Shown here in pieces: positions 2,501-49,757 of a stretch of 64,000 bases of DNA. A program made the translations under genes and the position numbers. The notes beneath the pieces are model-generated. The model saw nothing but the letters and a program-made list of their open reading frames with translations. It made no database searches and had not been told where the DNA came from. The number at the start of each line of letters is the position of its first letter. Position 1 is the first letter of the stretch. The stretch is from positions 62,001 through 126,000 of the IMG/VR virus record IMGVR_UViG_3300021142_000002; one strand, given 5' to 3'.

Positions 2501-5455
2501 ATGACAACCACCACTACTCAGTTTTTACTCAGTCGAATAAATCAATATTACTATAATCCTAGCAGTATAATGCAGGGAATGCTAGATACACTAGAATTAG
2601 GATTAAATGGAAATGATATCGTTGATCCAACATCTCCTTTTGTTCAGTTATTAGAATTTGCAGCCACTGCATCTACAGCCAGCATTATTAAATCTGAAGC
2701 GGTAACTAGAGCAATGTATCCAGCACTGTGTTTAACTCAATCTGATTTATTTAATCATTTATCAGATACCGATTATGTTGGGTTATTTGCTAGCCCAGCC
2801 AGCACTAGCATAACCATGATGATTCCTTATCAGCAATTAATAGCTGCAGCAATTGCACCCGATGCTAGTAATTTAAATATTAAACAAGTCATTATACCTG
2901 CCAATAGTCAAATTACTGTTAATGGAATTAATCTAGTTGTTGGTTATCCAGTTAATATTACTATTCAAACGGTAACTAATCTAGGGAGTACTTCAACAAC
3001 CATATTAACCACTCTAGATACTACAGTTACTAATCCTTTAGTTAAATTAAAAACAAACATCATTAGTAATGCCGTTGTTGCTTACAATGGTAGTCAATAC
3101 TTACAGTTTAATTTACCTGTACAACAGCTTAGTAATACGAGTACAGTTTATTCTTTAAATAGTGCAACTACGTTTGGACAGACTATTAATTTTAGTGATT
3201 CGTTTTGTTATGCTAGAGCCTATATTAATTTAGCTTCCAGTCCTGGTCAATGGACTGAAATACTCACCACACACAGTGTGATTAATTATGATATTAATTC
3301 ACCCACATTAAAAATGCGTGTTAATAATGGATCATTATCAGTTGCATTACCAGATATTTATAATAGTCTAAATCTAACAGGTAATTCTATTAGGATAGAT
3401 ATCTATACCTGTAAAGGATTAATGGATTTAGATCTATCCCAGTTAAATGCAGGTAGCTTTTCTGGCAAGTGGATGGATTTTAATACTTTTAATTCAAAGA
3501 ATACAACAGCCGCTATTGGTAAAGTCAGTGATATTATTATCTATTCTAATGATAGCTTAACTAATGGTATTAATGGTTTAACTTTAGAGCAAATAAGAGA
3601 GTTAGTGATTTATAGATCAAACTCTAGTAGTACGCCAGTAAGACTCAGTGATCTTACATTAGGTTTAGGTAAGTTAGGTTATGTAGTTCAAAAGATTGTA
3701 GACTCCGTTACTGATAGAATATTTGTAGCTAGTAAAAACATTCAATCTAGAGTAGTGGATGGATTAGTCACTAATCCATTAATCGCTAACATTGCAGTTA
3801 ATCTAAATGAACATTGGGGCGATGTAGGTGCAGCATATACAGACTCTATTATTAACCATAATAGTAATGCAGCTACACTGCTCCCTAATGCATTATTTTT
3901 AATGAGTAATGGGAATATAAACCTATTAACTAATGCTGATCTAGATAGCATTAATAACTTAGCTATGGATAGTTTAGCAGTTGCATTAAGCAATAACTTG
4001 TACTTCTATACACCTTTTCATTATGTAATAGATTATAGTCTTCCAACGATTAATGTGAGACCTTATTATTTAAGTGGTCCAATTGTTGTTAATAATAACT
4101 ATATTGCTAATAACCCATACAGGACTTATGGTATTAATACCATTATTTCTACCATTTCATTAACGGGAAATAATTATACATTAAGTCTAACGACTAAGAT
4201 ACCTACCGGATTAACTAACATTTATTGTCAATTAGTCTATACAGATCCTAGTAGCTATAAAAGCTATTATCTAGATAGTACAAGTATTATTAATCAGGCG
4301 AGTGCTACTTTTACTTTTGTATTAAATACTGAATTTGATATCAATCAGCAAGATGATATAGAAATGATCAATTTCTACGATGATAATAGAATGGTAGACT
4401 TTATCAATGTTAATTTAACTCAGCAATTTAGCGTATACTATTTTGTACAAGCTAATGCTATTGACTTAGAAATAACGCCTTATGGCACTAACTTTGATAG
4501 CCAGTATATGCCACCTACCGGCATAACTGTCATTGGTGCTACGCATGAAACCATTACATTAGAATTTGGCAATAGATTAACTTCTTTATATTGTCCTACT
4601 AAACAGTTATTAGCAACGACTAATTATGTAACTTACACTCAAGTGGTTAATGCAACTTATGCTGAAAACATTTATAAAGAAGGTCCACTAGGTAAGTTGT
4701 ATACTGTTAATACGGATGGTACGATTAGTTTTGAATTACTACACGCTAAAGGTGATCCAGTACTCGATGCTAATGGTCATAATGTTATTTTACATAATGT
4801 AGGCGATCCAGTGATGGATGCTAATGGTAATTCTATTCCAATAGAGCCTGCTAGTAATCAAATCTTAAGACAGCTTGGTGTTACTTTTGTAGATGCTAAA
4901 TATAGATTTGCTACCACAGCTAGTACAGCTAGTTATAATTTATCTATACCGACTCAAATTATCAATTATTTAAACTATGATATTGAGCCCTATATAGATA
5001 CTCTAAATGAAAGAACTGAGCTGTACTTTAAACCAATGGGTGAGGCTAATAGCATTAAGGTAAACTTTGGTAATGGTACTACAGGCACTGTAAATAGTTT
5101 ACTAAATATTAATATTATCTTTTACTTAAATGTAACTGCAGATAGTATTAAGAAACAGACGGCGGAAACACAGAATCTAATTAATAATACGACTATATTA
5201 GTTAGATCATTGATTAGTAAATACTTATCTAAAACAACTATTTCAATGAGTGAATTTACTGCAGAGCTAAACAATAATAAATCCCCTTTGGTAAGTGGTT
5301 TTGATATAGTGAGTTTCTTGCCAAATAATGCATCCATATTAACTATATTAGATGTTGGGGTAAGTTTCTCAGTGGCAGAAACATTAACATTATTAAGTGA
5401 TGGAACATTAGACGTAGTAGATTCAGTAAATTTAGTATTTGAATCACTATTGTAG
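2501..5455 (+). CDS. Baseplate wedge-like virion protein, phiKZ gp87-like
   Basis: 984-aa beta-rich ORF with an N-terminal DPTSPFVQLLE motif; GGAG RBS; assigned by recall and synteny. Confidence 0.55.
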   Translation: MTTTTTQFLLSRINQYYYNPSSIMQGMLDTLELGLNGNDIVDPTSPFVQLLEFAATASTASIIKSEAVTRAMYPALCLTQSDLFNHLSDTDYVGLFASPASTSITMMIPYQQLIAAAIAPDASNLNIKQVIIPANSQITVNGINLVVGYPVNITIQTVTNLGSTSTTILTTLDTTVTNPLVKLKTNIISNAVVAYNGSQYLQFNLPVQQLSNTSTVYSLNSATTFGQTINFSDSFCYARAYINLASSPGQWTEILTTHSVINYDINSPTLKMRVNNGSLSVALPDIYNSLNLTGNSIRIDIYTCKGLMDLDLSQLNAGSFSGKWMDFNTFNSKNTTAAIGKVSDIIIYSNDSLTNGINGLTLEQIRELVIYRSNSSSTPVRLSDLTLGLGKLGYVVQKIVDSVTDRIFVASKNIQSRVVDGLVTNPLIANIAVNLNEHWGDVGAAYTDSIINHNSNAATLLPNALFLMSNGNINLLTNADLDSINNLAMDSLAVALSNNLYFYTPFHYVIDYSLPTINVRPYYLSGPIVVNNNYIANNPYRTYGINTIISTISLTGNNYTLSLTTKIPTGLTNIYCQLVYTDPSSYKSYYLDSTSIINQASATFTFVLNTEFDINQQDDIEMINFYDDNRMVDFINVNLTQQFSVYYFVQANAIDLEITPYGTNFDSQYMPPTGITVIGATHETITLEFGNRLTSLYCPTKQLLATTNYVTYTQVVNATYAENIYKEGPLGKLYTVNTDGTISFELLHAKGDPVLDANGHNVILHNVGDPVMDANGNSIPIEPASNQILRQLGVTFVDAKYRFATTASTASYNLSIPTQIINYLNYDIEPYIDTLNERTELYFKPMGEANSIKVNFGNGTTGTVNSLLNINIIFYLNVTADSIKKQTAETQNLINNTTILVRSLISKYLSKTTISMSEFTAELNNNKSPLVSGFDIVSFLPNNASILTILDVGVSFSVAETLTLLSDGTLDVVDSVNLVFESLL

Positions 5456-5544: not shown

Positions 5545-6999
5545 TTACTCATAACACTTCATTGAACTATGGATATAAGAAGTATATGCTCTACACGCCG
5601 CAGAAGCTACTCCCAATAAACCCATGGCAGGCTGTACTGAGCTTATTGCTGTTTGTCCAGCATGTACCGCTATTTTTTTCTTAAGTTCAGTTACGGAGTC
5701 CATATTCATAATACCCAAACGCTCATACTCTTCAGTTATTTTTTCAAGTGCTTTTATTTTTGACTCTATTTTAGAAAAACTACTAGTATTTCTTACATAA
5801 TTAGTTGCATCTTTTAAATCAGCAATAAAAACTTTATTTACCATTTCAATGGCGTTTTCTGCCTCTTCTATCGTTAAAGATTCAACCTTTTCAGCAGTTT
5901 TAATTTTTAATGGGGTAACTTTAATAGAAAACCCAGATACTAGTTTAAGTCCATTACCATTAGTGTTAGATATTCCTAAAGCTGAAACATAAACGCCATA
6001 ACCACCTATAAGTTTAAGTTCCGTATCAAAATTAGTTTTATCATAGCCATCATTCCGGAAATGAGTTCCACCAATACGTGCTACAAGAGTTTTAATATCT
6101 AAAAGTCCATAATGATCTGCATGTTTAATAAAGTATTCAACAGCCTCTTCGCCAAATTTATTTTTAACACTAGAATTCAAAATTCTAAAAAGTTCTTTAA
6201 TTTCGGAATTAATATTCTTAGGTTTTGTTTCCCCTAGCATACATGTTAATGCCTTTAAAGTCTGTGCACTAATTTTAATAGCTTTAACTTCAGGCTTTTT
6301 ATGTATTTCATGTGTTTGAGATTTAATATTGTTAGCATTATAACTATGTTGATGGTTAACCATTTGAGAATGCTGACTACCTGCATCATGCTCACCTGCA
6401 GTAAACATAACTGGTTTACCCTCTTCCACGGGCTGTTCTGTTTTTACTTTTGCACGTTTAGCTTTCTTTCTTTTTACAATTTCTTCGGTACCTTTAGCTA
6501 CTTGTTCAGTAACTTCAACACTTGTAAATAGTGATTTAATCCAATTATAGATCTTTAATGACCAATGTTTTAAAAAAATCCAAATCTTTTCCCAAATCTT
6601 TTTAATCCATTCACCAACTGCTTGAATTTTTTCTTTAGTATCTTCTAGTCCGTAAGACAAAGACTCTAATCCTGCAGTGTCTATTTTATAATTATCACCT
6701 ACTAAAGTTTTAATGGCTAAAGTAGACATAGCGTTAGCATGCTTATCTAATCCACCTTTCTCCAATGATTTAATCATTAGATCTTTAATAGCTTCTAAGC
6801 CTTCAATAGTTTCACCAGCATCTTCGATAATGTCAGATACAGCTTCTACTTCTTCATGCTCTCTATCTACACCGTCTTCAAAACTTTCAGGCAATGTTTC
6901 ATCAACATCTACTTCTTCATCATACACATCTTCAGCGTTATTAGCGTCTTCTAATAACTCTTCCATAGCTGCTTTATAAATTGATCTACGTTTTCCCAT
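5545..6999 (-). CDS. Internal head/ejection protein with acidic propeptide
   Basis: Acidic N-terminus, GLE/SLE sites (EGLEA, AGLES, YGLED) matching the S/A/G-X-E head-protease motif, then an amphipathic helix WIKKIWEKIW. Confidence 0.6.
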   Translation of the reverse strand: MGKRRSIYKAAMEELLEDANNAEDVYDEEVDVDETLPESFEDGVDREHEEVEAVSDIIEDAGETIEGLEAIKDLMIKSLEKGGLDKHANAMSTLAIKTLVGDNYKIDTAGLESLSYGLEDTKEKIQAVGEWIKKIWEKIWIFLKHWSLKIYNWIKSLFTSVEVTEQVAKGTEEIVKRKKAKRAKVKTEQPVEEGKPVMFTAGEHDAGSQHSQMVNHQHSYNANNIKSQTHEIHKKPEVKAIKISAQTLKALTCMLGETKPKNINSEIKELFRILNSSVKNKFGEEAVEYFIKHADHYGLLDIKTLVARIGGTHFRNDGYDKTNFDTELKLIGGYGVYVSALGISNTNGNGLKLVSGFSIKVTPLKIKTAEKVESLTIEEAENAIEMVNKVFIADLKDATNYVRNTSSFSKIESKIKALEKITEEYERLGIMNMDSVTELKKKIAVHAGQTAISSVQPAMGLLGVASAACRAYTSYIHSSMKCYE

Positions 7000-10162: not shown

Positions 10163-11488
10163 TCAAACATTTTCATTTGTTTTTAAAGATAATGCTGCTG
10201 CTGCTGAAAACAAATCATTATTGTAGAGTGCTTCAATATCATGATTAAACTTTATAATAGCTTCTGTTTTACTACCAGAGAATGTTAGTATTCCATACAT
10301 TAACTCTATTAGTGTTTTATTCTCATGCATTTTATCCAGTACTTTTTCAATACCTTTATAATCTAGCAATAGCTTTTCTTTTTGTTCTTTAGCTAGAGTA
10401 GTATCCTTTAAAGCATCATTGACTTGTTGTTTTAATTTTAATATTCTTTTATCTAATGGATCATACTCTGGGATATCTGGAGAATGTTTTATTAGCATGA
10501 CTAATATTACAAAAAAACCAATCCCTAGTGTACTCAATCCTGTTGCTACTGCAAAAAATGCAGAGCCTGCAGTAATACCAAATAGTGGACCTACAACTTC
10601 TAGAAAGAAAAAAGTTTTAGGAGATACATATTCTCTAGCGCCTTGAGTTCTATATAGCTTATCAAAGCGAGTAGCTAAATGTCTACCATAACCAAATCTA
10701 GCACAAAATTGATCGGCTAATACTTCCCATGTTCTAGCATCATAAATATCTAAATCTAATTCTCTCTTACTTTCTTCAACGGCAGCATTAAATAATAAGA
10801 CTCTATAAGAAGTTTCATTTAGATTTTGATTAGCCAGTAATTGTTTATCATCAAAAGTAATATCATATTCTTTTTCTAAAGAATGTAGGATAATTACTTT
10901 CTGTTCTACCTTAGTGGCATTGGCTAATCTTTTTACACCTTCATTGAGTAACAGATTAGTCTTTAATATTTTCCCAATAATTACAAAGTAGTAAAACCAG
11001 TGGCCTATTTCATGGAGTAATACAGCAACCACTTCCTTTACAGTATACATACTGCTATTAGATAGAAATAAATTACCTACTTCACAATATGTTTTAATCT
11101 TAGAATAATCACCTGTTACTTTAACAGTTTGTAAATTAATAGTTCCTTCAAAGTATTTCTTTTCATTTAAAATATTTAAAAAGGTTGGATTACGCACCTC
11201 ATAGTTTTCAGAAATGGTGTGATTATTTACTAATGAAGGCATGTATATACCGGCACCCAGTAAGTTAGGTCTATTAAAAAACACAATAGATAGTCCAGTA
11301 TGTTCAGATACTATTTTAGATAATGCTGATTTCTCTAATGTATCTTTTTCTATAATTAGACTATTTCTAACCTTAGTAATTTCTGCTTCTAAATCAGGTC
11401 CTAGAGTAGAGTTAAATTGATGTACAATACTCTCTATGGCATAAAAGTCTTTAATGCTTAGTTTAGGTCTCATAGCTTTTATATCCAA
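10163..11488 (-). CDS. Zincin-like metallopeptidase-domain protein, probably virion-associated
   Basis: HEXXH motif (LLHEIGH), downstream EVLADQF, and a hydrophobic hairpin near the C-terminus. Confidence 0.55.
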   Translation of the reverse strand: MDIKAMRPKLSIKDFYAIESIVHQFNSTLGPDLEAEITKVRNSLIIEKDTLEKSALSKIVSEHTGLSIVFFNRPNLLGAGIYMPSLVNNHTISENYEVRNPTFLNILNEKKYFEGTINLQTVKVTGDYSKIKTYCEVGNLFLSNSSMYTVKEVVAVLLHEIGHWFYYFVIIGKILKTNLLLNEGVKRLANATKVEQKVIILHSLEKEYDITFDDKQLLANQNLNETSYRVLLFNAAVEESKRELDLDIYDARTWEVLADQFCARFGYGRHLATRFDKLYRTQGAREYVSPKTFFFLEVVGPLFGITAGSAFFAVATGLSTLGIGFFVILVMLIKHSPDIPEYDPLDKRILKLKQQVNDALKDTTLAKEQKEKLLLDYKGIEKVLDKMHENKTLIELMYGILTFSGSKTEAIIKFNHDIEALYNNDLFSAAAALSLKTNENV

Positions 11489-44408: not shown

Positions 44409-44438
44409 AGATAATGTATTGATCTATTTTCATTGATT
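44409..44438 (-). promoter_or_regulatory. Early promoter
   Basis: AATCAA-N14-TACATTATCT. Confidence 0.6.
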
Positions 44439-44605
44439 TATCTGTTAATAAAATTACTCCAGATACTTGTTGTTACATCGGGTAAATTGATAACACTACT
44501 TAATTGCCCTAGATTAGTCGAATCATGAATACCATAGTGCGACTCTAGTAATCTACCCGCTTCTTGATGCCTTTTATCCATTAAAAGGAACATATTCATT
44601 TCGTC
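44438..44605 (-). CDS. nvRNAP beta' exon 4 (55 aa)
   Basis: DEMNMFLLMDKRHQEAGRLLESHYGIHDSTNLGQLSSVINLPDVTTSIWSNFINR*. Confidence 0.85.
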   Translation of the reverse strand, partial: DEMNMFLLMDKRHQEAGRLLESHYGIHDSTNLGQLSSVINLPDVTTSIWSNFINR

Positions 44606-47087
44606 CGTATTGTTCAGATAGAGTCGTTAATTCTATCCCGTAGTGATTAACTACTGCTAATACTCTCGTATTAGACCAGATCATGTCTTTACCGATTAGT
44701 ATTTCTTTAAAATACTAATGAAGGTACCTCCCATTTCTTCCCACTTGGGTTCTACTCCGCATAACCGGATGATCGTTGAACTTTTTCCATATACAAATAC
44801 TGTACTTAGGAACTTAGCTGCATAGTTATCTCTATTTACTATATTTTCAAACTGTGGCATTATCTTTCGATAATACAGTAGTATAGTAACTTAACAAGAT
44901 GTTCTAGCAATTAAAGAGGGTTCTATCTTAATATTTCTATTAAGTAGGGCATTTGCATACCATCATACGTATTGTTCAGATAGAATCGTTAATTCTATCC
45001 CGCAGCTTTACCTGCATCGCTAACACTTTCATGTTAGACCAGACTATATCTTCTACTAACTAGATTTAATTAGTAGCCCACCACTTCGAGATTACTTAAT
45101 CTCTACACCACGCAACCGGTTAGTCGTTGAACTTTACTCATATGCTCAGTAGAGCACTTAGAGTCTTAGCTGCTGATTGCCCAATCTTTATTATTTTTAA
45201 ACATTCATATTTCTTTTCAAAAATACAGTAGTTAATAAAGCTCTAAGGGGTTTCCAGCAATTCAATGGGATTCTTTATAACCTTACGACTATAAAGGACT
45301 CTAATTTCACTTATACTTAATTTAAATACCATCATAAAAAAGATGCTAGATAAAATAGGAATTATATAAGCATTTGATATCTGCATTGCATCCACGCAGC
45401 ACTAGAGTAGAAAAACTGATTGTTTTATCCTTTAAATCATTTTTTACTTTAGTTATATAAAAACATTGTGCAGATAGTCTTCCAAGACTAGGCATATATC
45501 TTTAAATAAGGTCGTTAATCTTATTTCTACTAATGTAGCTCTTACTCTCGTAAGATGTTGAGACTATATCATTACCTTTTACTTACTTTGTAAGTAAGCA
45601 TTCAGGCACACACCACTTCGAGATTACTTAATCTCTACTCTACTCGATTCAATTTATTCAATCGTCTTTCGATAGTCGTTGAACGTTCTCCTTATCTCGA
45701 TAATAGACTTAGGAGCTTCGCTGCTGATTGACTCTATTTACTATTTTTCAAACTATGGTATTATCTTTCAATAATACAGTAGTATAGTAACCTAACGAGT
45801 GATTCCAGCAATTAGATGTGTTTAATCAACAATATTTCTATTGAGGGGAACCCAATAACTTATGGTTATATGAAATAATAGTTTACAGAAATAAATCTGA
45901 TGATATTAAACTATAAATTATTTATATAAATTCCGTTGAAATAAAACCATAATCCCTCTGCATGGTAAAGGCGTTATTTCAAATTTTGTAACTCGTTTTA
46001 TTTCTGGCCCTTCATTAATTAGTTCTTGTATAATTTCGTCTATTAACTTATTATACATATTGCCACTATTTTCAACTAAATCATAGGCTCTTTTAGAACT
46101 AAAATTTCGCTGCATTAATTTAGAAACAATATGAACCTTTAACATCTCTAGACCCTGGGCCCAGGGTACATGTATTTCACTATATGAATGAGGTACATTT
46201 AAAGATGTGATCACCGCCCGCATACAAAAGTGTGATCTAGAACAATATAACTGTCCTCTAAACCATCCCTTCTTTAAACAGAATGTACCCTTAATCGTTG
46301 CAACATGATAAGCTACTAGATTAGCTATAACAGAGACTACTTTAGTTTCTATCTGGTTATCCGTTAATGGCTTAGACCTAGGCATGCTAATGTTAGCGAT
46401 TGTTCTACAAGCATCAATAGCGCCTGTAATAGATCGTTTATCTGCCCATGCGCCTGTTTGGGTATTTTCTACAATTAACATAGCCTTGGTAGGCACGGGT
46501 AAATACTTTGGAAATATTTTATTTCTAATGGCTTTAAGAAAGTAACAATAATCCAAAGCTTTATTCTTAGTTAATATAGGCAATATCTCTAAGAATTTAT
46601 CAAAGTTTCTAATAAAGTAATTTAATCCTCGCTCCCAACCTATGGATTCTAAATACTTTATTTTCTTTTGTGACTCTTTTGTTAAGTTACTAGGTACTTT
46701 AGCTCTGGAGTTTGTTAAATACTCCATGATGGAATAAGAGCCTCCTAGATGAGTATTTAACTGTACCCAGACTTCAGGTACAATAAATCCATCTATTCCA
46801 TCCGGTACTCTTATCCATGTTCGCATATCTATATTGCCTTCAGCAGGATAAGTAACAGGGGTATTGCAATTATCACAATACTTGTTTTCTTTAAATCCAT
46901 ACTTAGTATGCCCACAAGCGCAAGTAGGTACAGAGCCCAATACATCTGATTCATAAGTCGTTAGAATTAATGAATTAAAGGCAGCTCTATCTTCCTCTGT
47001 TTGATAAGGCACATCATTTAATACAACTGGTTTGACTACCTTAGTAAAAACAGTATCAAAGTCCGGTATATCAATGTAGTTTGACAA
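44438..47087 (-). CDS. rpoC: nvRNAP beta' catalytic subunit (phiKZ gp55-like), 4 exons, 482 aa spliced: join(47087-45930, 45492-45379, 44967-44959, 44605-44438)
   Basis: Zn motif CACG..CDNC in exon 1; the spliced junctions rebuild FQRN|PSL and GCNAD|YDG|DEMN; all phase 0; TTG start with GGAG RBS. Confidence 0.88.
44606..44958 (-). ncRNA. Group I intron 3 (353 nt, ORF-less, IA-like)
   Basis: 5' exon ends in U with P1 GGU/AU-GCAA-AU/GCC; P AAUUGCUAGAA; R GUUCAACGAUCA; S GACAUGAUCU; GAGA-capped P9; terminal G. Confidence 0.85.
44959..44967 (-). CDS. nvRNAP beta' exon 3: 9-nt microexon TAT GAT GGT (YDG)
   Basis: Preceded by the omega-G of intron 2, ends in U, and supplies the middle Asp of the catalytic DxDGD. 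Confidence 0.8.
44968..45378 (-). ncRNA. Group I intron 2 (411 nt, ORF-less, IA-like)
   Basis: P AAUUGCUGGAA; Q AAUCAGCAGC; R GUUCAACGACUA (45121-45132); S GAUAUAGUCU (45041-45050); GAAA-capped P9; terminal G. Confidence 0.85.
45379..45492 (-). CDS. nvRNAP beta' exon 2 (38 aa)
   Basis: PSLGRLSAQCFYITKVKNDLKDKTISFSTLVLRGCNAD. Confidence 0.85.
45493..45929 (-). ncRNA. Group I intron 1 (437 nt, ORF-less, IA-like)
   Basis: P AAUUGCUGGAA; Q AAUCAGCAGC; R GUUCAACGACUA (45673-45684); S GAUAUAGUCU (45561-45570); 5' exon ends in U; terminal G. Confidence 0.85.
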
Positions 47088-47099
47088 ATTTATAATCTC

Positions 47100-47192
47100 C
47101 TATAATAAATGTTCAAATAGATAATTTCCTATGGCAGAAGCTGTAATAAAAATAACTAATATATAGACTAACTCCCTGATAAAATGATACAT
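47100..47192 (-). CDS. Small membrane peptide (30 aa, not in ORF track)
   Basis: MYHFIRELVYILVIFITASAIGNYLFEHLL; AAGGAG RBS. Confidence 0.6.
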   Translation of the reverse strand: MYHFIRELVYILVIFITASAIGNYLFEHLL

Positions 47193-47196
47193 TGAC

Positions 47197-47331
47197 TTAC
47201 TCCTTTCTTTTATAGAAAAGAACTGTTAAACGCTTAGCGATAAAGTTAGCAATAGATTTTTCAGATGTTATCATTACTATTAAGAAAATGATAGCCAATA
47301 TAAAGGCCAATAAATCTGGATCAATTATCAT
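47197..47331 (-). CDS. Small membrane peptide (44 aa, not in ORF track)
   Basis: MIIDPDLLAFILAIIFLIVMITSEKSIANFIAKRLTVLFYKRKE; TAATG coupling to the upstream ORF. Confidence 0.6.
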   Translation of the reverse strand: MIIDPDLLAFILAIIFLIVMITSEKSIANFIAKRLTVLFYKRKE

Positions 47332-47537
47332 TAATGTCCTATTTGTAAAATGTTAAGTATAGTAGAAATAGATGAAATAATAACCGTTAATAAAAACCCT
47401 ACTAATAAAGGAATAGAAACATAAGGCACTTTATTATTAGCATCTAAATCCTTTAATTCTAAACGAATGATGTTTCTAATGAAGTAGGTTAATCCTAGCA
47501 TCATTATTATTAACATCAAAGAAATAATATACATCAT
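47331..47537 (-). CDS. Small two-helix membrane protein (68 aa)
   Basis: Two hydrophobic segments; GGAG RBS. Confidence 0.65.
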   Translation of the reverse strand: MMYIISLMLIIMMLGLTYFIRNIIRLELKDLDANNKVPYVSIPLLVGFLLTVIISSISTILNILQIGH

Positions 47538-47574
47538 AAAAATTCTCCAAAATTATTGACTAGATTTAAATGGG

Positions 47575-47691
47575 TTATTGAGTGAGCCCAAATAAAGAAA
47601 GTAATTTAGCCGCACTAGATGGATAAAAATTATATATAGTTATAGCTATAATTGTTGTTACTACCAGCACATAGCTGAGTATAAATAGCAT
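47575..47691 (-). CDS. Small membrane peptide (38 aa, not in ORF track)
   Basis: MLFILSYVLVVTTIIAITIYNFYPSSAAKLLSLFGLTQ; AGGAG RBS. Confidence 0.6.
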   Translation of the reverse strand: MLFILSYVLVVTTIIAITIYNFYPSSAAKLLSLFGLTQ

Positions 47692-47771: not shown

Positions 47772-49757
47772 TTATCTTTGGTTCCAAGTAGAAGCCAAAG
47801 GTGATGTTGTTCCATAGTGCTGTGGATTATAACCTGGTTGGTTATAATTTCTTTGGTAGTAAGAAGAAACACCATGACCTTGCAGCGGAGTAATGTACTC
47901 GCTATTAAATGATTGACGTTGTACCATAGAAGACATATCAGATAGACCTTCAATAGTTACAGCAATGCCGCATTGTGCGTGCATTTCTTCAATAGTATTG
48001 ATGAAATCATTATTGAAGAAGAACCGTGAAATCAATCCAGTCACTGTAAAGTTAGGCGCCATTTGTTTACGGATATTACGTTTGATATCCATGTCTTCTA
48101 AAGAGTTATTGCCTGGATAGAAACCTAAGGCAAATGAATCAAAGAATGTCATGTCGCCTGCTGAATAACTTAAGCAGGTCAGATAATCAATAGTTCGACC
48201 ATCACGTGCTCTACCATTTGTATCAGTGTAATAACCGGCATGTAAATCCACACGCAGCGTAGAATTAGTAGCACGATCGTATTGCATGATAGGTTTATTC
48301 TTTGGCAGCCATAATTTGCTGAATACACCGCCTGAATAAGCATCCAATTCATTAATAATAATAGATTCTTCTTTAGAACCCGGTACAGCACCTGCAAACA
48401 AAGTTTGTAACCATTCAGTTGGACTGCCTTTAATGATATCCATAGCGACCAGCACAGTACGAGTGCAATACATAGCTGCCATCGCTTGAGCAGTTACTTT
48501 ATCTTCACCCACCATAGGGTCAGAGCCGCTAACAACAGTTAGTTCTTTAGGAACAAATTGTTTTTGTGGCATTGGCAATGGATCATGTTCAAGACCTAAG
48601 ATACCTAAGTTAGGTTTCAACTGATTATCACCTACAAAAGGTTCAAAGATAGTAGCCCATTTATTTTGGGTAGGGTCTAGTAATGGTAATAATGATGGCA
48701 GCGCTAATAGCTGAGTCAACAAATTATCATTAGACCGACTAGATGCACCTAAAGATGAAGTGTTTGTAATCACAAACACTGGATCATAGCCTGGAGTAGG
48801 TACTGGGTAACCAGTATAAGGTGCTTGCTGAGTAGGTACTCTGCGGTAGAAATCCATATAGCCCGCAATAGCCGTTAATGCAATTTCATCTTGTTGATTA
48901 CTAATAGCACGAACATCAGTGCTAATTGGTTTACCTGCTTGGCGTGCATAAAGGACCACGTTAACATCGGCGACATAAGGCTGATTAACAGATGATAAAT
49001 AAATGCCGCCTGGAGTGACATCAAACTTAGATACCAACTGTACAGTATTGTTAGCCAATACATTAACAGTGACTGGCGAGGTTGGTAAGTTTTGTTTGCT
49101 GCGCATAGTAGCGCTGATGGCAGCCAAGGCATGGTCATAGAACTTAGCGAGTGAATTAATATTCAACAACTCAACCGTTTTTGGCACCACCATGTTAGAT
49201 GCACAAACACTGCCATTTGATTTACCCGATACATTGCCAATAACATTTTCAACGATTTCTCGAGTTTGTTTGTTCCAGAATAGAGCTGGAAACATGTCAA
49301 TTTCAACCGAGCGATTATTTCTACCAATGTTTGCATGCTTATTAGCTAGTGGGCGAGCCATTTCTTCAAACATTAATGTACTATAGTACACTAAGTTTGT
49401 TCTGCTACATTTAAACCAAAGTGCAACAATCGCAATTGGAATGCGTGGATCTTCAACTGGAAGGACTTTAACTTGTAGAATGGTTGGATTATTTTCAACC
49501 CGTTTTTGCACATCCGCCAATGCTTTCAGCAATTCAGTAGTATTACCTGAACCTACATTGCCAGATGCAGTAACTGAAGATAAACCCATTAAGGCATCAA
49601 AACCGACTGTAGCTGCTGAACCTGCATTGCCACTTACATAGGCTGATGCTTGAGATTCAAACGTATCATTAGTTTTGTGCTGTTGCTGATTGCCACGACC
49701 TGTGGTTAGAATTACTTCATCTTCCTCAAAGCCTGGGCGATTAGTAGTATTATTCAT
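47772..49757 (-). CDS. chmA: Chimallin, phage nuclear shell protein
   Basis: 661 aa; position upstream of the gp55-like beta'; C-terminal segments (HAGYY..GRARDGRTIDYL; FTVTGLISRFFFNNDFINTIEEM..CGIAVTIEG) parallel the recalled ChmA sequence; disordered termini. Confidence 0.85.
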   Translation of the reverse strand: MNNTTNRPGFEEDEVILTTGRGNQQQHKTNDTFESQASAYVSGNAGSAATVGFDALMGLSSVTASGNVGSGNTTELLKALADVQKRVENNPTILQVKVLPVEDPRIPIAIVALWFKCSRTNLVYYSTLMFEEMARPLANKHANIGRNNRSVEIDMFPALFWNKQTREIVENVIGNVSGKSNGSVCASNMVVPKTVELLNINSLAKFYDHALAAISATMRSKQNLPTSPVTVNVLANNTVQLVSKFDVTPGGIYLSSVNQPYVADVNVVLYARQAGKPISTDVRAISNQQDEIALTAIAGYMDFYRRVPTQQAPYTGYPVPTPGYDPVFVITNTSSLGASSRSNDNLLTQLLALPSLLPLLDPTQNKWATIFEPFVGDNQLKPNLGILGLEHDPLPMPQKQFVPKELTVVSGSDPMVGEDKVTAQAMAAMYCTRTVLVAMDIIKGSPTEWLQTLFAGAVPGSKEESIIINELDAYSGGVFSKLWLPKNKPIMQYDRATNSTLRVDLHAGYYTDTNGRARDGRTIDYLTCLSYSAGDMTFFDSFALGFYPGNNSLEDMDIKRNIRKQMAPNFTVTGLISRFFFNNDFINTIEEMHAQCGIAVTIEGLSDMSSMVQRQSFNSEYITPLQGHGVSSYYQRNYNQPGYNPQHYGTTSPLASTWNQR

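What the first reader, a model, noticed from the sequence alone, without database searches (positions are those of the whole stretch)
44438..45929. Three tandem group I introns dismember the RNA polymerase active site, leaving a 9-nt microexon (YDG)
Seen in sequence: the 389-aa ORF stops just after FQRN, and the 1.5 kb that follows holds three complete group I cores (P/Q/R/S elements, 5' exon ending in U, terminal G). Removing 45493-45929, 44968-45378 and 44606-44958 joins FQRN|PSL...GCNAD|YDG|DEMN in frame to give 482 aa. Established knowledge: NADFDGD is the Mg-binding catalytic motif of beta', and single introns occur in phiKZ-like RNAP genes. Inference: the three catalytic Asp residues are spread over three exons, and one exon is only 9 nt. 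Its first 6 nt (UAUGAU) could serve P10 of intron 2 while its last 3 (GGU) form P1 of intron 3. Making active nvRNAP would need three ribozyme events, which could act as an AND-gate or timer for the early-to-middle switch. I know of no described case of such a microexon in a phage, but cannot check this.
Basis: partly seen in the sequence, partly recalled or inferred. Interest (0 to 1): 0.95.

Follow-up and report, generated by a model that had tools for sequence, protein, structure and literature searches.

The report
Three introns split polymerase active site
A nucleus-forming giant phage has three self-splicing group I introns packed into the catalytic loop of its own RNA polymerase gene, leaving a 9-base exon between two of them; about a dozen uncultured relatives carry similar tiny exons, so the feature is real and recurrent, and it extends known phage intron biology without adding a new principle.

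Summary
Rfam's group I intron model finds exactly three matches above its curated cut-off in the 64 kb window, all on the minus strand inside the reported interval. Removing 45493-45929, 44968-45378 and 44606-44958 gives a 482-aa protein. That protein aligns end to end, with no gap at any junction, to intronless homologues of phiKZ gp55 (non-virion RNA polymerase beta-prime, N-terminal part). The catalytic NADYDGD motif is split NAD|YDG|D, so the middle exon is 9 nt (44959-44967). The locus is identical in at least three independent assemblies, and the nuclear-shell (chimallin) gene lies just upstream, as in phiKZ.

New here:
- About half of 93 related loci carry introns in this 45-codon stretch.
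- About 13 other lineages have exons of 9-20 nt there. L054 has the same three sites and a 9-nt FDG exon.
- phiKZ itself has one related intron at APN|ADFDGD.

The AND-gate or timer idea has no support. Accumulation of selfish introns at a conserved target is the simpler reading.

Caveats: no transcript data; intron 3 has only a 3-bp exon pairing; intron 2 carries a decoy copy of the microexon.

The closest precedent is Twort orf142 (three introns, 23-nt exon). I rate this a new variant of a known kind.

The parts
45930..47087 (-). Exon 1 of the nvRNAP beta-prime N-terminal subunit gene (386 codons, TTG start, ends ...FQRN)
   Evidence: ORF listing. PHROG 2987 'RNA polymerase beta subunit', E 1e-91, covering profile positions 1-380 of 478. 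PDB 7ogp_A (PHIKZ055), E 8e-52.
45493..45929 (-). Intron 1 (437 nt, no ORF), inserted at QRN|P
   Evidence: Rfam Intron_gpI 68.0 bits at 45539-45867. P1 is GGAAU (45934-45930) with GUUCC (45851-45847), 5 bp including U.G at the splice site. The intron ends in G at 45493.
45379..45492 (-). Exon 2 (114 nt, PSLGRLSAQ...LRGCNAD)
   Evidence: In-frame translation. Matches HMM positions 383-420 of intronless homologues.
44968..45378 (-). Intron 2 (411 nt, no ORF), inserted at NAD|Y
   Evidence: Rfam Intron_gpI 91.3 bits at 45020-45316. The guide sequence AUUAGA|GUC lies at 45305-45297: GAU/GUC forms P1, and UAUGAU/AUUAGA forms P10 (5 of 6). A GUC directly before P2 is conserved in 7 of 7 anchored NAD| introns of relatives. 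The intron ends in G at 44968.
45320..45336 (-). Fossil or decoy copy, inside intron 2, of the microexon plus the first 8 nt of intron 3 (15 of 17 identical; 11 nt exact)
   Evidence: Direct-repeat family D9. Not seen in the six other microexon-bearing loci checked. Function unknown.
44959..44967 (-). Microexon (exon 3), 9 nt TATGATGGT = Y-D-G, carrying the middle catalytic Asp
   Evidence: It is flanked by the terminal G of intron 2 and the start of intron 3. It restores NADYDGD without a gap. Equivalent 9-20 nt exons occur in about 13 other lineages.
44606..44958 (-). Intron 3 (353 nt, no ORF with a Pfam match), inserted at YDG|D
   Evidence: Rfam Intron_gpI 54.3 bits at 44657-44966. The P1 hairpin GGUAU-GCAA-AUGCC (44961-44948) is the minimum-energy fold. 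P7 (44770-44774 with 44679-44683) is kept through two double compensatory changes relative to introns 1 and 2. The intron ends in G at 44606.
44438..44605 (-). Exon 4 (DEMNMFLLMD...NFINR, stop)
   Evidence: In-frame translation. Matches HMM positions 424-477.
47772..49757 (-). Upstream neighbour: nuclear shell protein (chimallin), same order as phiKZ gp54-gp55
   Evidence: PHROG 4795, E 5e-34. Pfam Chimallin_Phikzvirus on the identical gene in L095. phiKZ annotation.

Best explanation
The window comes from an uncultured nucleus-forming jumbo phage (a chimallivirus; IMG/VR contig of 220 kb). Its gene for the N-terminal part of the non-virion RNA polymerase beta-prime subunit (the phiKZ gp55 homologue) is interrupted by three related, ORF-less group I introns of the phage IA type.

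Each intron is inferred to excise itself by the usual guanosine-initiated two-step reaction. Ligation of four exons (1158, 114, 9 and 168 nt) gives an mRNA for a 482-aa protein with an intact NADYDGD magnesium-binding loop.

The 9-nt exon does double duty. Its first six bases can pair with the guide of intron 2 (P10). Its last three bases, together with the first two bases of intron 3, form P1 of intron 3.

The introns are most likely selfish elements that accumulated here because this is the most conserved DNA of the gene and a target of several intron and homing-endonuclease lineages. Tiny exons arise when two lineages occupy sites a few bases apart.

Shown: the ribozyme cores, the boundaries, the restored reading frame, and the recurrence in relatives. 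Inferred: that splicing actually occurs, and any order or efficiency of the three reactions.
For: - Three Rfam matches above the gathering score, and none elsewhere in the window.
- T at each 5' splice site, G at each 3' end, and an in-frame join.
- Gap-free alignment of the joined product to intronless homologues.
- gp55 homology and chimallin synteny.
- phiKZ gp55 itself has a group I intron (75.6 bits) at APN|ADFDGD. Its last 12 nt are the same as those of introns 2 and 3. Its spliced product is the chain deposited in PDB 7ogp (residues 435|436).
- P7 stays Watson-Crick in 28 of 28 related introns, with compensatory changes including two in intron 3.
- DG|D introns of relatives show exon-guide covariation: GACGGU pairs with GCYGUC, and GAUGGU pairs with GCCAUC.
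- A GUC guide is conserved in NAD| introns.
- Microexons encode exactly the missing residues in L054, L022, L092, L037, L036, L050, L066, L006, L033 and L034; L046 and L071 fit too, but their boundaries are ambiguous. A covariance-model match lies on both flanks in eight of them.
- The sequence is identical in independent assemblies.
Against: - There is no transcript or protein evidence.
- No spliced-length protein identical to this one exists in the 5.8-billion-protein collection.
- Intron 3 scores only 54.3 against a cut-off of 50. It has 3 exon-side P1 pairs, where 8 of 11 introns at the same site have 6.
- P10 of introns 1 and 3 is negligible.
- Intron 2 holds a second copy of the microexon whose GGU could pair with the same GUC guide, so it may act as a cryptic 5' splice site.
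- Introns 2 and 3 have nearly identical 3' ends (43 nt, 91%). As in Twort orf142, this could favour skipping of the microexon.
- No homing endonuclease is present, so the way the introns spread is not shown.
Confidence: 0.85

Rival explanations
1. The three splicing events form a regulatory device: an AND-gate or timer that delays active non-virion polymerase. A variant is alternative splicing that skips the 9-nt exon and makes a catalytically dead beta-prime (NAD|DEMN, still in frame).
For: All three introns must be removed for activity, which follows from the sequence. Exon skipping between similar tandem group I introns is documented for Twort orf142 (23-nt exon) and for a Bastillevirinae polymerase gene. 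Introns 2 and 3 share nearly identical 3' ends, and skipping here would stay in frame.
Against: Intron number varies from 0 to 3 among relatives, and the closest homologues found (56-57% identical over exon 1) have none or one. That is not expected of a conserved control circuit. Tiny exons in relatives are 9, 10, 12, 15 and 20 nt, so skipping would often shift the frame. No timing or expression data exist.
Confidence: 0.08
2. The locus is a decaying gene. One or more introns (most likely intron 3, or the 5' splice site of intron 2) no longer splice correctly, and the phage lineage is defective or relies on another polymerase copy.
For: Intron 3 has a near-threshold score and a minimal P1. There is a decoy splice site in intron 2. 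Only 64 kb of the 220-kb genome was examined for paralogues.
Against: The exons carry no stop or frameshift and keep every conserved residue. P7 of intron 3 is maintained by compensatory changes. The same sequence was recovered unchanged from several samples, so the phage is replicating. A 3-bp guide pairing is known to suffice in the Azoarcus intron (my own knowledge).
Confidence: 0.05
3. The pieces are separate polypeptides of a further-split polymerase, or are joined at the protein level by inteins, and RNA splicing is not involved.
For: Jumbo-phage polymerase subunits are known to be split into several genes.
Against: Exon 2 and the microexon have no start codon or ribosome-binding site, and a 3-residue polypeptide is not credible. 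The intervening DNA matches a ribozyme model, not an intein, and the short ORFs that lie partly or wholly in it have no Pfam domain. The phiKZ homologue is deposited as one fused chain.
Confidence: 0.01

Closest known systems
Staphylococcus phage Twort orf142 (Landthaler & Shub 1999, as summarised in PMC10136302)
   Same: One phage gene with three group I introns of the IA2 kind. Two of them are similar to each other and flank a very short exon. Exon inclusion and exon skipping are both possible.
   Different: The Twort short exon is 23 nt and here it is 9 nt. Twort's gene encodes a tail tube protein and this one an enzyme active site. Twort splicing was shown experimentally, whereas here it is inferred.
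phiKZ gp55 intron (PHIKZ055 / HNH endonuclease PHIKZ056 / PHIKZ056.1)
   Same: Same gene, same 45-codon region and same intron family (the last 12 nt are identical to those of introns 2 and 3). The gene also follows the chimallin gene.
   Different: phiKZ has a single intron, at N|ADFDGD, and it carries an HNH endonuclease gene. The cultured relatives PA7 and PS119XW also have a single intron, but at DGD|Q. None of the three cultured phages examined here has a microexon.
Placozoan mitochondrial cox1 micro exon (PMC5436844), and microexons reported in other mitochondrial genes (same paper)
   Same: A tiny exon (down to 1 nt) lies between two independent group I introns and restores a conserved catalytic residue. 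It is explained by a second intron inserting next to the first.
   Different: Those are organelle genomes of eukaryotes with IB introns, and they have RNA-seq support. This is a bacteriophage with IA-type introns.
PhiPA3 gp210 intron in the virion RNA polymerase beta gene (PMC11620839)
   Same: A group I intron sits at conserved catalytic Asp residues of a chimallivirus RNA polymerase gene. The target is conserved across the family.
   Different: It is in a different polymerase and subunit. It is a single intron with an active HNH endonuclease that acts in phage-phage competition. The introns here have no endonuclease.
Multi-intron genes of Bastillevirinae and of 'Jug' gut jumbo phages (PMC11878797, PMC12880540)
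   Same: Essential phage genes are cut into two to four pieces by several group I introns, and intron content varies between close relatives.
   Different: The passages I searched in those papers mention no very short exons. The genes are for DNA polymerase, terminase and ribonucleotide reductase, not RNA polymerase.

Membership tests
Group I intron (Rfam RF00028) | Sequence and structure match to the covariance model at or above the curated score | tested here: met
   Scores of 91.3, 68.0 and 54.3 bits against a cut-off of 50, each covering the full model (positions 1-253).
Group I intron (Rfam RF00028) | The 5' exon ends in U, paired with a G of an internal guide sequence (P1) | tested here: met
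   Intron 1: 5 bp. Intron 2: GAU/GUC plus 5 intron-side pairs, with the guide conserved in relatives. Intron 3: GGU/GCC plus 2 intron-side pairs closed by a GCAA loop. The pairings of introns 2 and 3 are short.
Group I intron (Rfam RF00028) | Terminal G at the 3' splice site | tested here: met
   G at 45493, 44968 and 44606. The last 12 nt of introns 2 and 3 are the same as in the phiKZ gp55 intron.
Group I intron (Rfam RF00028) | P7 helix (guanosine-binding site) maintained | tested here: met
   All five P7 pairs are standard pairs (Watson-Crick or G-U) in 28 of 28 related introns. Intron 3 keeps the helix through two double substitutions.
Group I intron (Rfam RF00028) | Self-splicing with guanosine and Mg, giving ligated exons | not testable with these tools
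   No RNA data are available. The spliced reading frame is restored exactly.
Mobile (homing) group I intron | Intron-encoded homing endonuclease | tested here: not met
   No ORF wholly inside an intron exceeds 54 aa. The three short ORFs tested, which lie partly or wholly in introns 2 and 3, have no Pfam match. Relatives at the same sites do carry HNH genes (L037, L042).
phiKZ gp55-type nvRNAP beta-prime N-terminal subunit | Sequence homology to the solved subunit | tested here: met
   7ogp_A, E 8e-52, over residues 9-365. PHROG 2987, E 1e-91.
phiKZ gp55-type nvRNAP beta-prime N-terminal subunit | Contiguous NADFDGD catalytic loop | tested here: met
   Present only after the exons are joined, as NADYDGD. 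The same Y variant is seen in homologue P0020. No contiguous copy exists in any frame of the window.
Chimalliviridae (nucleus-forming jumbo phages) | Chimallin gene, here adjacent to the polymerase gene as in phiKZ | tested here: met

The most novel reading that the evidence does not exclude
Catalytic-loop microexons of 9-20 nt could be a maintained feature of chimallivirus non-virion polymerase genes, and not transient accidents. They would be tolerated, or exploited, because these phages separate transcription from translation, so introns can fold and splice without ribosomes as in a eukaryotic nucleus. The ratio of inclusion to skipping of the 9-nt exon would then set the amount of active versus dead beta-prime and tune the switch to middle and late transcription.
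Probability: 0.12. Interest if true: 0.8.

Novelty: new variant of a known kind. Interest (0 to 1): 0.6.

Why it matters
It sets a lower bound, 9 nt, on how little exon two neighbouring phage group I ribozymes appear to need. The same nine bases would serve as the 3' exon of one ribozyme and the 5' exon of the next. This is a compact natural system for studying splice-site choice and exon skipping by ribozymes.

It identifies the Mg-binding loop of the jumbo-phage polymerase as a crowded landing pad, with at least seven distinct insertion sites within about 45 codons. That bears on intron-mediated competition between co-infecting chimalliviruses.

It also matters for annotation. Gene callers report this essential gene as a truncated 389-aa protein plus an orphan 51-53 aa ORF, and about half of the related metagenomic loci are mis-annotated in the same way.

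Tried and rejected
- Near-identical DNA in GenBank phages: none found.
- Pfam on the separate exon translations: no significant match, because exon 1 ends before the Pfam RNAP domain.
- Closest relatives P0010 and P0003: the longer contigs had no DNA on file. L101 (P0008) has two introns and no microexon. L102 (P0003) is a short contig that ends inside the gene.
- Intron tree by insertion site: introns do not group cleanly by site or by genome. The three window introns are 64-66% identical to each other and about as similar to introns of other phages. The tree therefore cannot decide between spread within the gene and independent homing.
- Free-energy folding of the 5' parts of introns 1 and 2: not better than shuffled sequence, so it is uninformative for P1.
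- L076, with four intron-like matches: I could not derive a consistent exon structure under the U/G splice-site rules.
- A local I3-like P1 hairpin for intron 2: rejected as too weak, in favour of the distal GUC guide that relatives conserve.
- Assembly artefact: rejected, because independent assemblies are identical.
Full report
**What is there**

On the minus strand, a 389-codon ORF (47087-45918) stops three codons after FQRN. Rfam's group I intron model finds three full-length matches above its gathering score of 50:
- 45539-45867: 68.0 bits.
- 45020-45316: 91.3 bits.
- 44657-44966: 54.3 bits.

Nothing else in the 64 kb matches.
- Exon 1 ends in T at 45930. Intron 1 (437 nt) ends in G at 45493.
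- Exon 2 (114 nt) ends in T at 45379. Intron 2 (411 nt) ends in G at 44968.
- The 9 nt TATGATGGT (44967-44959) end in T.
- Intron 3 (353 nt) ends in G at 44606. Exon 4 runs to the stop at 44438.

The joined exons encode 482 aa reading ...FQRN|PSL...GCNAD|YDG|DEMN...

**What the gene is**

Exon 1 matches PHROG 2987 (RNA polymerase beta subunit, E 1e-91), but only profile positions 1-380 of 478. It also matches chain A of the solved phiKZ non-virion RNA polymerase, PHIKZ055, at E 8e-52. The gene immediately upstream (47772-49757) is the nuclear shell protein chimallin. That is the order gp54-gp55 in phiKZ. The window is part of IMG/VR contig UViG_3300021142_000002, 220 kb. It is therefore an uncultured chimallivirus, and the gene is the N-terminal half of the beta-prime-like subunit of its non-virion polymerase.

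**Are the junctions right?**

The protein collection holds homologues 41-57% identical to exon 1. Those with the Pfam RNAP domain are uninterrupted (P0002, P0004, P0005, P0007, P0014, P0019) and read ...QRNPSLxRLSAQ...NADFDGDEMN.... An HMM built from 12 such proteins aligns the joined product over positions 2-477 of 479 (705.6 bits), with no insertion or deletion at any of the three junctions. No neighbouring choice of splice points keeps both the U/G rule and the frame, which follows from the sequence. Y in place of F in the motif also occurs in P0020.

**Not an artefact**

Fifteen contigs carry the exon 1 ORF. Those with enough DNA (ENA ERZ27271897, ERZ27271810; JGI Ga0214197) are 100% identical over the whole 2650-nt gene, or over the 2620 nt that the contig covers.

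**Ribozyme anatomy**

The three introns are paralogues of one family, 64-66% identical pairwise. They share patches of much higher identity:
- 33 nt at 94% between introns 1 and 2.
- 70 nt at 87% between introns 1 and 3.
- 43 nt at 91% across the 3' ends of introns 2 and 3.

All three have a GNRA-capped P2 and an insertion after the P7 5' strand, as expected for the IA type (subgroup assignment from my own knowledge).

P7 is not modelled as a helix by Rfam because it is pseudoknotted with P3. It stays fully paired in 28 of 28 related introns. Intron 3 has two double compensatory substitutions there (GAUCA with UGAUC, instead of GACUA with UAGUC). This explains its low score and also argues that it is under selection as a ribozyme.

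Splice-site pairings:
- **Intron 1.** GGAAU pairs with GUUCC (5 bp), with a 78-nt insertion in the P1 loop.
- **Intron 2.** The guide AUUAGA|GUC (45305-45297) lies directly before P2. GAU/GUC is the exon part of P1. The first intron bases, UC(A)AAU, can pair with AUU(A)GA if A+1 bulges. The microexon bases UAUGAU can pair with the same AUUAGA (5 of 6) as P10. This is the usual exchange of the P1 extension for P10.
- **Intron 3.** GGU plus AU pairs with AUGCC around a GCAA loop, and this hairpin is the minimum-energy fold.

**Comparative support**

I fetched 93 related loci. A sequence HMM built from 28 covariance-model matches finds at least one intron directly after exon 1 in 45 of them, always on the coding strand. 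Exon mapping with the protein HMM gives at least seven insertion sites within about 45 codons: QRN|P, PSLxxL|, xN|AD (phiKZ), NA|D, NAD|F, DG|D and DGD|x.

L054 has introns at the same three sites as the window and a 9-nt exon encoding FDG. L022 and L092 have NAD|FDG|D with two introns.

Exons of other sizes:
- 12 nt encoding DFDG: L037, L036, L050, L066.
- 12 nt encoding FDGD: L006, L046.
- 15 nt encoding DFDGD: L033.
- 20 nt: L034.
- 9-10 nt: L070 and L071.

Both flanking introns reach the Rfam cut-off in L054, L022, L037, L033, L066, L050, L034 and L046.

In the DG|D introns the guide covaries with the codon used for the middle Asp. GACGGU pairs with GCUGUC or GCCGUC, and GAUGGU pairs with GCCAUC. 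This gives six contiguous pairs in 8 of 11 cases. In NAD| introns a GUC sits directly before P2 in 7 of 7 anchored cases. These patterns show that the tiny exons are used as ribozyme substrates.

**Link to cultured phages**

phiKZ gp55 is itself interrupted at APN|ADFDGD by a group I intron (75.6 bits) carrying the HNH gene gp56. The deposited polymerase chain is the fusion across that site, residues 435|436. Its last 12 nt are those of introns 2 and 3. PA7 and PS119XW, close relatives of phiKZ, instead have one intron at DGD|Q. Two intron lineages that target sites 18 nt apart in near-identical genes give a simple route to microexons when both are present. I saw no microexon in the three cultured phages I examined.

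**How it most likely works, and what is not shown**

Three independent self-splicing reactions restore the mRNA. No order is imposed by the pairings, because each P1 and P10 uses only bases that are present before and after the neighbour splices.

The introns carry no endonuclease. They were probably mobilised in trans, or by recombination during co-infection.

Points that weaken the model:
- There are no RNA data.
- Intron 3 has only three exon-side P1 pairs.
- P10 is negligible for introns 1 and 3.
- Intron 2 contains a 17-nt copy (15 of 17) of the microexon plus the start of intron 3, at 45320-45336. Its GGU could use the same GUC guide. This copy is unique to this phage among the six other loci checked. 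It may be a relic of a duplication, or a cryptic splice site.
- The near-identical 3' ends of introns 2 and 3 could allow skipping of the microexon. That would give an in-frame NAD|DEMN product lacking the middle Asp, as seen for the 23-nt exon of Twort orf142.

**The regulatory idea**

Nothing supports an AND-gate or timer. Intron number varies from none to three among relatives. Tiny-exon lengths are not consistently multiples of three, so skipping cannot be a conserved in-frame switch.

One inference is worth testing. These phages uncouple transcription from translation (PMC12908238), which may relax the known dependence of phage intron splicing on translating ribosomes and so allow introns to crowd.

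**Novelty**

Already known:
- Group I introns at active sites of phage genes, three introns in one phage gene, and exon skipping.
- Microexons between group I introns in mitochondria.

In the held literature I found no phage exon shorter than 23 nt between group I introns. I also found no description of multiple introns or microexons in jumbo-phage polymerase genes. I rate it a new variant of a known kind, and of real interest to ribozyme and phage biologists.

Noticed in passing
window 45320-45336 (minus strand, inside intron 2): A 17-nt copy (15 of 17; 11 nt exact) of the microexon plus the first 8 nt of intron 3. It could be a fossil of a tandem duplication or a cryptic 5' splice site. In the predicted fold its GAUG is paired with an upstream CAUC.
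   Followed up: partly
L071 about 5227 and 6797-6806; L046 5407 and 5835-5847; L076 about 5700 and 7129: In these relatives the frame is restored only if the 5' exon ends in A (GA|) and the next exon supplies the third base of the Asp codon. This is an apparent exception to the rule that the 5' exon ends in U.
   Followed up: partly
L076 5146-7965: Four intron-like matches fall in one gp55 homologue, which implies two very small exons. I could not derive a consistent exon structure.
   Followed up: partly
L099 (Pseudomonas phage PA7) 1655-1959, L100 (PS119XW) 3117-3422, versus L094 (phiKZ) 10169-10490: Closely related cultured phages carry their single gp55 intron at different sites (DGD|Q versus N|ADFDGD, 18 nt apart). 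The downstream exon is annotated as a separate hypothetical protein.
   Followed up: yes
window 47100-47691 (minus strand): Four very small, strongly hydrophobic ORFs (30, 44, 68 and 38 aa) lie between the chimallin gene and the polymerase gene. Three of them are also called as genes in every independent contig that covers them, and the other two in those that reach that far.
   Followed up: no
L037 6290-6588; L042 5900-6300: Relatives carry HNH-type endonuclease ORFs inside the intron at the DG|D site. The corresponding window intron has none.
   Followed up: partly
L055 5642: The NAD| intron of this relative follows GAC, not GAT. The splice-site base would therefore pair C-G with the GUC guide instead of the usual U.G wobble.
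   Followed up: no
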